64,000 bases of DNA from Blastocystis sp. Blastoise (lineage: Eukaryota; Protista; Bigyra: Opalinata), in the NCBI GenBank assembly GCA_039096225.1, contig JBBPEB010000002.1, positions 372,001 to 436,000 of the forward strand. Reading direction: 5' to 3'. The notes below the pieces were generated by a model that was given only the letters and a program-made list of their open reading frames with translations, did no database searches and had not been told where the DNA came from. Position 1 is the stretch's first letter, and each line of letters starts with the position of its first letter. The position numbers and the translations under genes were made by a program. Shown here one piece after another: positions 19,632 to 41,970 of the stretch.

Positions 19632-21220
19632 GAATAATTATATGATATTTTTATTTTCACTTATTATTAATATGATATTTTCTTTTTTTTCCTATTTTCT
19701 ATTTTCATTATTTTTTATTTTTTTTATTTTTATTTTTACATTCTTTTTCCTCTTTTTTTTATTATTTATTTTATTACTGAAAGAATATTATTATTCTATT
19801 TTATGATAGTGAAAAAAGTTTAAAAATATTCTTTATTCTCATATTATTGCTTAATAGTGTTATTCTTTTATCTTTTAAAGTGGGTAGTATTTTATGTGAT
19901 GATATTATTACTTTATTAATAAAACATGTATCAATTATTATTTGATAGTGTTATAATTAAATGTGTTTTTCTTATAATTGTCGATAATATAATAAATATC
20001 AAATTATTTGTTCAAAAATTAAAAAAAACTTCTTACTGATTTAATTGAAATATTACCTAATTTAAAACAAGTTATACTGATAAAAATTTTATATTAAAGA
20101 ATAATATACACAATTTCATATAAAATAATAATTTTATTTTATAGAGATTATATTTTTAATTACTGATTCATTTTTCTATATCATGATATATTATAGTACC
20201 ATATTGTTTTCTATATAAATGAAAGTATATCTCTTTATCATTTATTTCTATTGGTTCCTATTCTTCTATTATAATTAAGATGTTTATAGGCTTTAATACA
20301 TTTCGAATATTATTAAATGACTTACTCTAGCAAAAAATATTATAAATAGTAATGAGAACGATATGTATTTGATTTTATGCAAAATAATAATCTTATTAAT
20401 CAAAATATATATATATAATTATATATAAAATGATTAAAATATTTATATAATGAAGAATAAATTGGAAAAAAAAATATAATTTATAAATGAAAAGTAAATA
20501 AAAAGAAGATTAATGAATATTAAAATAAAAGATTGTTAGTATATGATAAAAAATAATGAATATTTTGAAGAATAGAAAAATAATTTTGAAGATAAGAAAA
20601 AATATTTATTGTATAAAAAGTATTAGAATGATTTTATATGTGAATAAGAAATAGAATATTGAAAAAAGAAGAAGAATAAGTTTGGATTAATTAAATAATA
20701 ATGATAAAAATGTTATTATGAAGATAAATAGAATAAAATAGAGAATATATAATGAAATATGAATGAATTCAATTGAATTGTTTTTATATTAAATAATAAA
20801 TAAATAAAATATAAAAGAATAATAATAATCGTAAAAATTTCAAGAAAAAAAGAAAAATATAAAAAAAAAGAATGTAAAGTGATAATGAATGAATATTTGA
20901 TGATAAATAAGAAAAATGAATAGATGTTTGAACATAAGACTGAAGGTAAGAAAGGGTAAGAATGGTAATAATCGTGATAAATAGATAAAAAGAAGGCTAA
21001 ATAGATAAATAAACCTGGAAATAATATAAATAAGAATGAAAAGAAGTCCATTCATTTTTGTATGAAAAGATAAAATACTCTTACTACTGTGTCTGCTTTA
21101 TAGCTTAAATTGATTCAGGTAAATAATATAATAATAAATATAATAGTTGATATATGTAGATAATATAAAATGAATAAAAATAGAATATAAAATAATAAAT
21201 AATTTGTATAGCTGAAGAAA

Positions 21221-21771
21221 ATGTCTCTTAGTGAATTATCTGTTGTCGAAAAGGAAGAACTCATCGTTTCCCTTGCTGCTCTTATCTGTGCTGATGGTAG
21301 CGTTGCTACTTCCGTAAGTAGTTATTATAATTGATAGAAAATTGAATAATAATAATGATATTTAAAATATAAATGATTTAATAAGATTGAATATAATTGT
21401 TTTAAATGAAAATAATATTATTAAATTGTTAATTTATTATTATTATTATTTTTTATTATTATTATTAGTATTAATTTTATAATATATATATATATATATA
21501 GAAGGAAAACCTTGATACTCTTATTGAAAAGAGTGGTAACAAAGTCGATTCTTATTGGACTGCTATCTTTGCTTCTCATCTTGAAGGAAAGAACGTTCTT
21601 GATATGATCGCTTCTGGAGTTTCTGCTGCTGCTGCTCCTGCTGCTGCTGGTGCCGCTGCTGCTTCTACTGATGCTCCTGCTGAAGAAAAGAAGGAAGAAG
21701 AAGAAGAAGAAGAAGAAGACTTAGGTGGTGCTGGTGGTCTCTTCGGTGGTGATGATGATGATGACTGGTAA
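21221..21771 (+). CDS. RPLP1: 60S acidic ribosomal protein P1, copy 1; intron 21314-21501
   Basis: [78 protein letters not shown]. Confidence 0.93.
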
Positions 21772-21961
21772 ACCATTTAATTCATCTAAGAAAGATGTAA
21801 ATTGTTTTTTCTTCATCGAATATAACTACAATAATAAGAGAAAAAATAATTGTTTTGTTATTAAATATATATATTAAAAAATAATTATTATTTTCTTTAT
21901 TTTTAAAATTTTTATAATAAAACAAAACAAAAATAATAAAAACAATAAATTTACATATATT

Positions 21962-22189
21962 TTATTCATTTTTATTATTATTATTATTATTATCTAAATT
22001 AGTTTTTTTATATTGATTTTCTAAATGATTTGCCTATAATAATAATTAAAATATATAAATAAATATATATACAACATGAAGTGCTTGTTGAACCCATACT
22101 TTGATATCTGGAACTTGATAATTTTGTGCAACATAAAGACCACCAATAAAACCAATAAAAATACTTGAAAGATTAGAAATTCCAGTCAT
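21962..22189 (-). CDS. STMP1: Short transmembrane mitochondrial protein 1-like (DUF4535), copy 1, 2 exons
   Basis: MTGISNLSSIFIGFIGGLYVAQNYQVPDIKVW contains the G..G.Y.AQNY.VP signature. Confidence 0.8.
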
Positions 22190-22734
22190 TATTGTCTATT
22201 AAATCTATATAATATAATTTTAATAAAAATATAGAAATTAAATGGAAAAGTCAATCAGTCATCTCTTTATAAGATACATAATAATTTATAAATAAATACA
22301 TAAAGATATTAATAATAATAATATAAAGACTAAATAGAATAAAAATAACTATTATATATAATAATAATAAATAATAAAATGATAAAAATTTTCGTACAGT
22401 TTTCTTTTTCATTATTATTACTATTATTTTTTTTTTGATTTATAAAGAATTGAATAAAATAAATTTTTGTTTTTTTTATAATTATAATTTTATAAGAATC
22501 TTATTTTAATTTTATTATAAAAATCATTTAGTATTGATTATTAAAATGTATAATAATATATTATTTTATTATTTATTGGTAATTATTATTAATAAAGAAT
22601 ATATATATATATATAATATAATATAACAAAACATTATTAAAAATTATAAATTTATAGAATAATAATAATAATAATAATAATAGTTATTATTATTATTATT
22701 TAAATAACATTAGAAATAATGTTATATAATAATT

Positions 22735-39299: not shown

Positions 39300-39844
39300 A
39301 ATTATTATATAACATTATTTCTAATGTTATTTAAATAATAATAATAATAACTATTATTATTATTATTATTATTATTCTATAAATTTATAATTTTTAATAA
39401 TGTTTTGTTATATTATATTATATATATATATATATTCTTTATTAATAATAATTACCAATAAATAATAAAATAATATATTATTATACATTTTAATAATCAA
39501 TACTAAATGATTTTTATAATAAAATTAAAATAAGATTCTTATAAAATTATAATTATAAAAAAAACAAAAATTTATTTTATTCAATTCTTTATAAATCAAA
39601 AAAAAAATAATAGTAATAATAATGAAAAAGAAAACTGTACGAAAATTTTTATCATTTTATTATTTATTATTATTATATATAATAGTTATTTTTATTCTAT
39701 TTAGTCTTTATATTATTATTATTAATATCTTTATGTATTTATTTATAAATTATTATGTATCTTATAAAGAGATGACTGATTGACTTTTCCATTTAATTTC
39801 TATATTTTTATTAAAATTATATTATATAGATTTAATAGACAATA

Positions 39845-40072
39845 ATGACTGGAATTTCTAATCTTTCAAGTATTTTTATTGGTTTTATTGGTGGTCTTTA
39901 TGTTGCACAAAATTATCAAGTTCCAGATATCAAAGTATGGGTTCAACAAGCACTTCATGTTGTATATATATTTATTTATATATTTTAATTATTATTATAG
40001 GCAAATCATTTAGAAAATCAATATAAAAAAACTAATTTAGATAATAATAATAATAATAATAAAAATGAATAA
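39845..40072 (+). CDS. STMP1: STMP1-like, copy 2
   Basis: ATG at 39845, GGLYVAQNYQVPDI, one intron, TAA at 40070-40072. Confidence 0.8.
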
Positions 40073-40262
40073 AATATATGTAAATTTATTGTTTTTATTA
40101 TTTTTGTTTTGTTTTATTATAAAAATTTTAAAAATAAAGAAAATAATAATTATTTTTTAATATATATATTTAATAACAAAACAATTTTTTTTTCTCTTAT
40201 TATTGTAGTTATATTCGATGAAGAAAAAACAATTTACATCTTTCTTAGATGAATTAAATGGT

Positions 40263-40819
40263 TTACCAGTCATCATCATCATCACCACCGAAGAGACCAC
40301 CAGCACCACCTAAGTCTTCTTCTTCTTCTTCTTCTTCTTCTTCTTCCTTCTTTTCTTCAGCAGGAGCATCAGTAGAAGCAGCAGCGGCACCAGCAGCAGC
40401 AGGAGCAGCAGCAGCAGAAACTCCAGAAGCGATCATATCAAGAACGTTCTTTCCTTCAAGATGAGAAGCAAAGATAGCAGTCCAATAAGAATCGACTTTG
40501 TTACCACTCTTTTCAATAAGAGTATCAAGGTTTTCCTTCTATATATATATATATATATTATAAAATTAATACTAATAATAATAATAAAAAATAATAATAA
40601 TAATAAATTAACAATTTAATAATATTATTTTCATTTAAAACAATTATATTCAATCTTATTAAATCATTTATATTTTAAATATCATTATTATTATTCAATT
40701 TTCTATCAATTATAATAACTACTTACGGAAGTAGCAACGCTACCATCAGCACAGATAAGAGCAGCAAGGGAAACGATGAGTTCTTCCTTTTCGACAACAG
40801 ATAATTCACTAAGAGACAT
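40263..40819 (-). CDS. RPLP1: 60S acidic ribosomal protein P1, copy 2 (Glu tract 10 versus 8 in copy 1)
   Basis: Inverted copy of 21221-21771 with two extra GAA codons. Confidence 0.93.
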
Positions 40820-41970
40820 TTTCTTCAGCTATACAAATTATTTATTATTTTATATTCTATTTTTATTTTTTATATTATCTACATATATCAACTATTATAT
40901 TTATTATTATATTATTTACCTGAATCAATTTAAGCTATAAAGCAGACACAGTAGTAAGAGTATTTTATCTTTTCATACAAAAATGAATGGACTTCTTTTC
41001 ATTCTTATTTATATTATTTCCAGGTTTATTTATCTATTTAGCCTTCTTTTTATCTATTTATCACGATTATTACCATTCTTACCCTTTCTTACCTTCAGTC
41101 TTATGTTCAAACATCTATTCATTTTTCTTATTTATCATCAAATATTCATTCATTATCACTTTACATTCTTTTTTTTTATATTTTTCTTTTTTTCTTGAAA
41201 TTTTTACGATTATTATTATTCTTTTATATTTTATTTATTTATTATTTAATATAAAAACAATTCAATTGAATTCATTCATATTTCATTATATATTCTCTAT
41301 TTTATTCTATTTATCTTCATAATAACATTTTTATCATTATTATTTAATTAATCCAAACTTATTCTTCTTCTTTTTTCAATATTCTATTTCTTATTCACAT
41401 ATAAAATCATTCTAATACTTTTTATACAATAAATATTTTTTCTTATCTTCAAAATTATTTTTCTATTCTTCAAAATATTCATTATTTTTTATCATATACT
41501 AACAATCTTTTATTTTAATATTCATTAATCTTCTTTTTATTTACTTTTCATTTATAAATTATATTTTTTTTTCCAATTTATTCTTCATTATATAAATATT
41601 TTAATCATTTTATATATAATTATCTCTTTTTTTTTTAATTCTCGGTTATTGTTATATGTTCATATTATTTATATATATATTTTTTTGTGTAATAAGATTA
41701 TTTTTTTCAATTTTTAAAATTAGATCACTAATTTTATAAAGAAATGCTCACCGATATACAATAATTCATGTGTAGTTTAAAGTGATTCATAAACCGATTG
41801 ATATTCTTTTTGTACACTCATTTAACAAAAGACACAGTTTTTAAAAGTAGCGTAAACAATAAAAACCTCTAACCGCGGGGAATTGTTTTGAGTAGCTATA
41901 AATATGATTTTTTCATATGCTTTTAAACTATCTGTCTTCATTTCAATTTTCGTTATAGATATTTGTAGCT

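What the first reader, a model, noticed from the sequence alone, without database searches (positions are those of the whole stretch)
20415..41623. 21-kb palindrome: two gene-bearing 6.2-kb inverted arms around an 8.8-kb core lacking protein genes
Seen: 20415-26595 is the reverse complement of 35425-41623, duplicating RPLP1, STMP1, DENR and RIO1 around a unique core. Known: an IR-core-IR layout defines Komagataella, Candida tropicalis and S. pombe centromeres, flip-flop mating-type cassettes in methylotrophic yeasts, and fold-back or transposon-induced duplications. Inference: this may be an invertible cassette or centromere-like locus maintained by arm-to-arm conversion. This core is by far the longest stretch without protein genes in an otherwise dense window.
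Basis: partly seen in the sequence, partly recalled or inferred. Interest (0 to 1): 0.85.

Follow-up and report, generated by a model that had tools for sequence, protein, structure and literature searches.

The report
Transposon-centred inverted gene duplication, Blastocystis
In a tortoise-gut Blastocystis, four housekeeping genes were recently copied as a mirror image, and the gene-free middle is not a centromere but one of about 30 near-identical copies of a jumping element that may itself have set off the duplication.

Summary
The inverted repeat is in the assembly as described. Arms 20415-26595 and 35425-41623 differ by one substitution and four microsatellite indels and carry RPLP1, STMP1, DENR and RIO1, found nowhere else in the genome. 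The core is not unique. 8,553 of its 8,829 bp are a non-autonomous CACTA/En-Spm element (26722-35274; 15-bp TIRs, AAT target duplication, subterminal repeats) with about 30 near-identical copies, up to three per contig; a Tnp2-bearing relative has the same ends. Only 126 + 147 bp are unique. None of 10 other copies tested has inverted flanks. So this is neither a Komagataella-type centromere nor a programmed flip-flop cassette. It is a very recent local fold-back duplication whose loop is almost exactly one transposon. That fit is unlikely by chance. I favour the element having seeded the fold-back (0.5) over a later insertion into a 273-bp spacer (0.27). No reads could be laid, so an assembly error (0.1) is not excluded. 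The genome is Blastocystis sp. Blastoise (Rus-B). The scan had already noted this CACTA family, and other transposon-centred palindromes, on other DNA of this genome.

The parts
20415..26595 (+). Left arm, 6,181 bp
   Evidence: two copies in genome
35425..41623 (-). Right arm, 6,199 bp, reverse complement of left arm
21221..21771 (+). RPLP1 (60S acidic P1), two exons; Glu run of 8
   Evidence: PF00428, E 2e-20
22064..22189 (-). STMP1/DUF4535 coding stretch (3' end not fixed)
   Evidence: PF15054, E 1e-9
22738..23408 (-). DENR, two exons
23777..26374 (+). RIO1 kinase, multi-exon; start and stop read from sequence
   Evidence: three exons hit PF01163; sequence
26596..26721 (.). Unique left spacer, 126 bp including the left AAT target copy (26719-26721)
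26722..35274 (+). Non-autonomous CACTA/En-Spm element, 8,553 bp, about 30 copies
26722..26736 (+). Left 15-bp terminal inverted repeat, begins CACTA
26746..26948 (+). Subterminal 73-bp tandem repeat, 2.8 copies, left end only
27250..27850 (-). Short exon-like blocks between GT-AG intron-like stretches inside the element; not joined or searched
29755..29823 (-). tRNA-shaped fold inside the element, non-canonical; not called by ARAGORN or Rfam
29850..33900 (+). Purine-rich, strongly skewed low-complexity tract inside the element
   Evidence: (GC skew 0.6-0.9)
35260..35274 (-). Right 15-bp terminal inverted repeat
35275..35424 (.). Right AAT target copy (35275-35277) plus unique right spacer of 147 bp
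26710..26719 (+). 10-bp flank sequence whose inverted copy lies just right of the element (35279-35288); extends the pairing of the element ends
35646..38257 (-). RIO1, second copy
   Evidence: mirror coordinates
38626..39296 (+). DENR, second copy (WA158_003446 by locus-tag order, inferred)
39845..39970 (+). STMP1, second copy
   Evidence: mirror coordinates
40263..40819 (-). RPLP1, second copy; Glu run of 10
20381..20414 (+). AT-only stretch abutting the left arm, 31/37 like the reverse complement of 41671-41707
41671..41707 (-). Partner of 20381-20414, offset 47 nt from the right arm end

Best explanation
A recent local fold-back inverted duplication seeded at a resident CACTA element. Shown: a complete element with an intact 3-bp target duplication fills all but 273 bp of the loop, the arms start 126 and 150 bp from its ends, and the arms are practically identical. 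Inferred order: (1) the element inserted next to the RIO1 3' end. (2) A break or stalled fork about 130-150 bp outside one end left a free 3' end. (3) The two element ends were held together, by TIR pairing in single-stranded DNA or by the transposase's paired-end complex, which put that free end beside the opposite flank. (4) It primed there and copied about 6.2 kb backwards. (5) It was rejoined to the distal chromosome by end joining, perhaps leaving the short similar patch at the outer junction. The result is a fixed, unprogrammed duplication of four genes. Which arm is the new copy is not known.
For: Element anatomy and copy number; matching 3-bp target duplications at 7 of 8 other simple insertion sites plus this one. 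The chance that one of 31 copies falls in a given 273 bp is about 2.5e-4, so the co-location needs a cause. The breakpoints are nearly symmetric about the element. Of 10 copies compared, this one has the strongest end-plus-flank pairing, -22.1 kcal/mol against -17.2 to -19.6, owing to a 10-bp flank inverted repeat seen at about 1% of background sites. Arms (1 substitution in 6.2 kb) and this element copy (1 private substitution in about 4.5 kb) look equally young. An 8.8-kb single-copy-type loop lies inside the 766-70,466-bp range of human fold-back spacers (PMC3907307). Widely spaced inverted repeats pair in single-stranded DNA in yeast (PMC10164571). A Tnp2 transposase lies between identical TIRs at C23:362896-378401.
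Against: 0 of 10 other copies has inverted flanks within 8 kb, so this is rare. In repeat-primed fold-back the non-homologous tail is removed (PMC10164571 abstract) and the arms should start at the repeat itself; here unique DNA remains on both sides. A 15-25-bp stem across 8.5 kb is far weaker than the Alu pairs of that study. One other copy also has an 11-bp hairpin near its site without a duplication. No outgroup or empty allele is at hand, so order of events is inferred, and no reads were laid.
Confidence: 0.5

Rival explanations
1. Duplication first, insertion second. A near-perfect palindrome with a 273-bp spacer arose by ordinary fold-back repair. The CACTA element later jumped into the spacer, and widening the loop to 8.8 kb made the palindrome stable enough to persist.
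For: The element has a clean target duplication, as after a plain insertion, and removing it leaves one contiguous unique 273-bp spacer. Short spacers make inverted repeats unstable (PMC10164571 abstract), so survivors would be enriched for widened loops (inference). The other copies are plain insertions.
Against: The target is tiny (2.5e-4 for this family) and the insertion is within about 10 bp of the spacer's centre. Arms are not more diverged than the element copy.
Confidence: 0.27
2. Assembly artefact: a false inverted copy built around a 30-copy repeat.
For: All arm differences sit in simple repeats or a homopolymer, so the true arms may be identical. The centre is a repeat that could mislead a graph. 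No reads were laid.
Against: Four distinct junctions are needed, each into unique DNA. A heterozygous inversion cannot supply them all, and fold-back chimeric reads leave no 8.8-kb loop (reasoning, own knowledge). The same assembly places other copies between matching target duplications. It is a nanopore assembly with N50 1.3 Mb (PMC12129017). The RPLP1 difference is in frame.
Confidence: 0.1
3. An older inverted repeat kept identical by arm-to-arm conversion or core inversion, with the transposon a late passenger.
For: 31/37 similarity continues past the outer edge with a 47-nt offset; background fraction 0.0005-0.04 depending on window.
Against: The match is AT-only, short and found after the fact, and could be a templated junction patch. 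The inner edge is sharp: spacer halves align at chance level, 57.5 against 57.6 +/- 7.1.
Confidence: 0.08
4. Centromere of the Komagataella / C. tropicalis IR-core-IR type, or a programmed flip-flop cassette.
For: Layout only; the core is the longest gene-poor stretch in the window.
Against: The core is a mobile element on at least 18 contigs at 1-3 copies each, not one unique core per chromosome. Arms are gene-bearing. Inverting the core would change no host gene's promoter or neighbour, as both arms are complete copies.
Confidence: 0.03

Closest known systems
CACTA / En-Spm (CMC) non-autonomous elements, e.g. soybean Tgm family (PMC2613891)
   Same: TIRs starting CACTA (15 bp here, 13 bp there), 3-bp target duplication, asymmetric subterminal repeats, Tnp2 (Transposase_21) in a relative with the same ends
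   Different: Stramenopile host; this copy has no transposase; cargo is a purine-skewed tract and a tRNA-shaped fold
Fold-back inverted duplications with a single-copy spacer (human, PMC3907307; yeast, PMC7467729)
   Same: Arm - unduplicated spacer - inverted arm; spacer size in range; sharp junctions
   Different: Only 6.2 kb and interstitial, with no evident terminal deletion or translocation; the spacer is 97% one transposon; junction microhomology cannot be read without the ancestral allele
Inverted duplications from sister-chromatid (alternative) transposition of maize Ac/fAc (bioRxiv 2020.01.07.897926)
   Same: Transposon-associated inverted duplication of host genes
   Different: There the centre is an excision footprint and element ends lie at the new outer junction. 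Here the centre is an intact element with its target duplication and no element end is at either outer junction.
Komagataella phaffii centromeres (PMC5010909)
   Same: IR-core-IR layout; the core could invert by recombination in the arms
   Different: There: 2-kb IR, 1-kb core, four centromeres unrelated in sequence, CenH3-bound. Here: gene-bearing 6.2-kb arms and a multicopy mobile core.

Membership tests
CACTA/En-Spm transposon (core) | Terminal inverted repeats beginning CACTA | tested here: met
   15-bp perfect TIRs at 26722 and 35274; 61 exact hits in genome, control 0
CACTA/En-Spm transposon (core) | 3-bp target-site duplication | tested here: met
   AAT here; matching and different triplets at 7 of 8 other simple sites
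CACTA/En-Spm transposon (core) | Subterminal repeats | tested here: met
   73-bp x 2.8 at the left end, asymmetric
CACTA/En-Spm transposon (core) | Dispersed copies in unrelated flanks | tested here: met
CACTA/En-Spm transposon (core) | Tnp2 transposase, in this copy (autonomous) or in trans | tested here: met
   Absent from this copy; Transposase_21 at four places, one between identical TIRs on C23. Mobilisation in trans is inferred.
Fold-back inverted duplication | Unduplicated spacer between inverted copies | tested here: met
   Spacer halves unique and not homologous
Fold-back inverted duplication | Inverted microhomology at the turn-round | not testable with these tools
   Needs the ancestral allele; no close relative found
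Fold-back inverted duplication | Doubled read depth over arms, spanning reads | not testable with these tools
Alternative (sister-chromatid) transposition product | Element end at the new outer junction and excision footprint at the centre | tested here: not met
   No TIR at 20414/41624; only two TIR hits in the window; centre is an intact element
IR-type centromere (Komagataella, C. tropicalis) | One IR-core-IR per chromosome around this kind of core | tested here: not met
   1-3 core copies per contig; 0 of 10 with inverted flanks
IR-type centromere (Komagataella, C. tropicalis) | CENH3 binding, Hi-C clustering | not testable with these tools
   No such data
Flip-flop mating-type cassette | Alternative genes in the invertible segment and both orientations in the population | tested here: inconclusive
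   No recognisable protein gene in the core; orientation counts not obtainable
Long-TIR Mutator/foldback element moving as one 21-kb unit | Target duplication at outer ends and other copies of the arms | tested here: not met
   No direct repeat at the outer ends; arms occur only here

The most novel reading that the evidence does not exclude
Paired transposon ends act as a scaffold that steers break repair into local mirror-image copies of neighbouring host genes, with breakpoints set symmetrically 100-150 bp outside an element that stays intact. If the other transposon-centred palindromes noted in this genome have the same geometry, this is a recurrent route to gene duplication distinct from alternative transposition and from repeat-primed fold-back.
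Probability: 0.2. Interest if true: 0.65.

Novelty: new member of a known kind. Interest (0 to 1): 0.33.

Why it matters
It removes a centromere candidate and shows that gene deserts with strong strand skew in this genome can simply be copies of one young CACTA family. It records a very recent doubling of three translation or ribosome genes (RPLP1, DENR, RIO1) and STMP1. The family and the palindrome are not mentioned in the main text of the genome paper ('CACTA', 'inverted', 'centromer' 0 hits). If the element seeded the event, the locus is a clean natural case for testing how an active transposon duplicates adjacent genes.

Tried and rejected
I did not fetch the rest by another tool. Spliced models were searched exon by exon by reference, and the joined step was left out, including for the exon-like blocks inside the element; P0001 and P0018 are proteins that a tool returned. 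Outgroup for gene order: ST1 and ST3 DENR neighbourhoods differ entirely, no other tortoise isolate was found, and the metagenome scan was empty, so the new arm cannot be told from the old. Telomere seed at the inner arm end: the genome's repeat is TTAGGG, the motif at 26571-26587 is a 7-mer type with one mismatch, and AAACCCTA is not enriched in the window; not used. Decayed homology in the spacer: none. Purine skew across the outer junctions did not settle polarity. Rfam and ARAGORN found nothing in the region. A recalled DIRS-1-centred inverted duplication in Dictyostelium was not confirmed in the paper read and is not used as support.
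Full report
Observation. Self-BLAST of the window gives one long inverted match of 6.2 kb at 99.45%. They differ by one substitution (21847, in an A run) and four indels: 2 nt, 6 nt in frame in the RPLP1 Glu run (8 vs 10 Glu), 3 nt and 11 nt in AAT/TAT tracts. Exons searched one by one hit Ribosomal_60s, DUF4535, DENR_N/SUI1 and RIO1. In the whole assembly the arm has two long matches, DENR two places and the right flank one. There are no N gaps.

Organism. DENR is identical to WA158_003446 of Blastocystis sp. 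Blastoise on a 1,322,594-bp contig, the length of our contig C15. The size (33.3 Mb), N50 and GC match isolate Rus-B from a Russian tortoise, a nanopore assembly of a diploid (PMC12129017). GenBank lists two accessions for the DENR protein, so the depositors annotated both copies.

The core is a transposon. The two ends of the core match about 30 other places at 94-100% identity, and every match starts at 26722 and stops at 35274. These points carry perfect 15-bp inverted repeats beginning CACTA, flanked by AAT on both sides. An exact search finds 61 such ends against 0 for the control; they pair into at least 29 elements, mostly 8.55 or 8.83 kb, on 18 contigs with up to three per contig. At 7 of 8 other simple sites the flanking triplets match and differ from site to site; the tandem pair on C13 looks like one copy inserted into the end of another. 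A 73-bp subterminal repeat lies at the left end. These are the marks of CACTA elements (PMC2613891). The copy has no transposase, but Transposase_21 occurs at four places, one inside a 15.5-kb stretch on C23 bounded by the same TIRs; this is the likely helper (inference). The window's copy has one private substitution in about 4.5 kb compared, so the burst is very recent. The scan had already described this family on other DNA (s1-718335, s1-723221); I reached the identification before reading those notes.

What is left. The core is 126 bp unique + 8,553 bp element + 3 bp target copy + 147 bp unique. The two unique pieces are single-copy, unrelated to each other (alignment score 57.5 against 57.6 +/- 7.1 for shuffles) and hold no convincing reading frame. 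For 10 other insertion sites, 8 kb of left and right flank share no match of 100 bp or more. The inverted arms are thus particular to this site.

Centromere and cassette. Komagataella centromeres are one per chromosome, unrelated to each other, with a 1-kb CenH3-bound core (PMC5010909). Here the core is a mobile repeat spread unevenly over contigs and the arms are full of housekeeping genes. Because both arms are complete copies, turning the core round would change no host gene's context, so a switch would have nothing to switch. Passive inversion through 6.2 kb of near identity is possible and untested.

Mechanism. The layout flank - arm - single spacer - inverted arm - flank is that of fold-back inverted duplications, whose spacers in humans run from 766 to 70,466 bp (PMC3907307; yeast: PMC7467729). 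It does not fit sister-chromatid transposition, where the centre is an excision footprint and element ends lie at the new junction (bioRxiv 2020.01.07.897926). The open point is why the loop is almost exactly one transposon. A given 273 bp has a chance of 2.5e-4 of receiving one of 31 copies. Either the element came first and shaped the event, or it landed later and was kept because it stabilised a tight palindrome. For the first: the arms start at nearly equal distances from the two ends (126 and 150 bp), as expected if the ends were held together when a free 3' end primed on the far flank; a 10-bp inverted repeat in the flanks extends the TIR pairing and makes it the strongest of 10 copies (-22.1 against -17.2 to -19.6 kcal/mol; such hairpins at about 1% of background sites); and arms and element look equally young. 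Notes of the scan on other transposon-centred palindromes in this genome (s1-726027, s1-728714) point the same way, but I did not check them. Against: in repeat-primed fold-back the tail is clipped and arms start at the repeat (PMC10164571); the stem is short for an 8.5-kb loop; and most copies do nothing of the kind. I give 0.5 to transposon first and 0.27 to insertion second. All steps of either path are inferred; only the end structure is shown.

Outer junction. The 34 bp abutting the left arm resemble, at 31 of 37 columns, a stretch 47 nt beyond the right arm (background fraction 0.003, 0.0005 or 0.04 for 100, 150 or 350-bp windows). It may be a templated junction patch, of the kind reported at yeast breaks (PMC11724301), a remnant of older and longer arms, or chance in AT-only DNA. 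It does not fix which arm is new, and ST1/ST3 gene order is no help.

Artefact. No read evidence was obtained. On structure alone an error is unlikely: it needs four false or mixed junctions into unique DNA, and the assembly resolves other copies of the same element between matching target duplications. I leave 0.1.

Limits. Spliced models were not joined.

Verdict. Real in the assembly; a recent inverted duplication of four genes around a young non-autonomous CACTA element. Both parts are known kinds. The remaining interest is the symmetric fit of loop and element. Interest 0.33.

Noticed in passing
window 29755-29823 (-) and 29850-33900: The element carries a tRNA-shaped fold with a non-canonical anticodon arm directly downstream (minus strand) of a 4-kb polypyrimidine tract; earlier scan notes read this as a mascRNA-like element after a long non-coding RNA.
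   Followed up: partly
G000:C13:909068-926219: Two head-to-tail copies of the element; the left flank ends in a partial TIR, as if one copy inserted three bases into the TIR of the other.
   Followed up: partly
G000:C23:362896-378401: 15.5-kb stretch with the same 15-bp TIRs and a Transposase_21 frame of over 720 codons, 62 bp from a non-autonomous copy: likely autonomous partner.
   Followed up: partly
G000:C5:500192, C19:220920, C23:205345: Three further Tnp2 frames (758 codons open) not bounded by the exact TIR searched: a second CACTA subfamily.
   Followed up: no
G000 element copies (L007): Two size classes, about 8.55 and 8.83 kb; the longer class is about 95% identical at the right end and diverged around 27500-28500.
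   Followed up: no
window 26571-26587 and 35433-35449: A 17-bp stretch with one mismatch to a TTTAGGG-type repeat lies 8 bp inside the inner arm end; elsewhere it occurs only in a C20 array and at contig ends. The genome's telomere repeat is TTAGGG.
   Followed up: partly
G000:C20:1045987-1076829: Tandem array with a period of about 800 bp, each unit holding a telomere-like 17-mer.
   Followed up: no
window 60093-60504 and L008:160-571: A 414-bp stretch 94% identical to DNA near the C31:567755 element copy: another small repeat family.
   Followed up: no
window 41971-43480: Rag-family GTPase (Gtr1_RagA, WA158_003448), single copy and very diverged: no other hit at E 1e-8.
   Followed up: partly
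GenBank KAK8815229-KAK8815234: Four accessions lie between the two DENR copies, two more than the RIO1 pair needs; models may have been called inside the element or RIO1 split.
   Followed up: no
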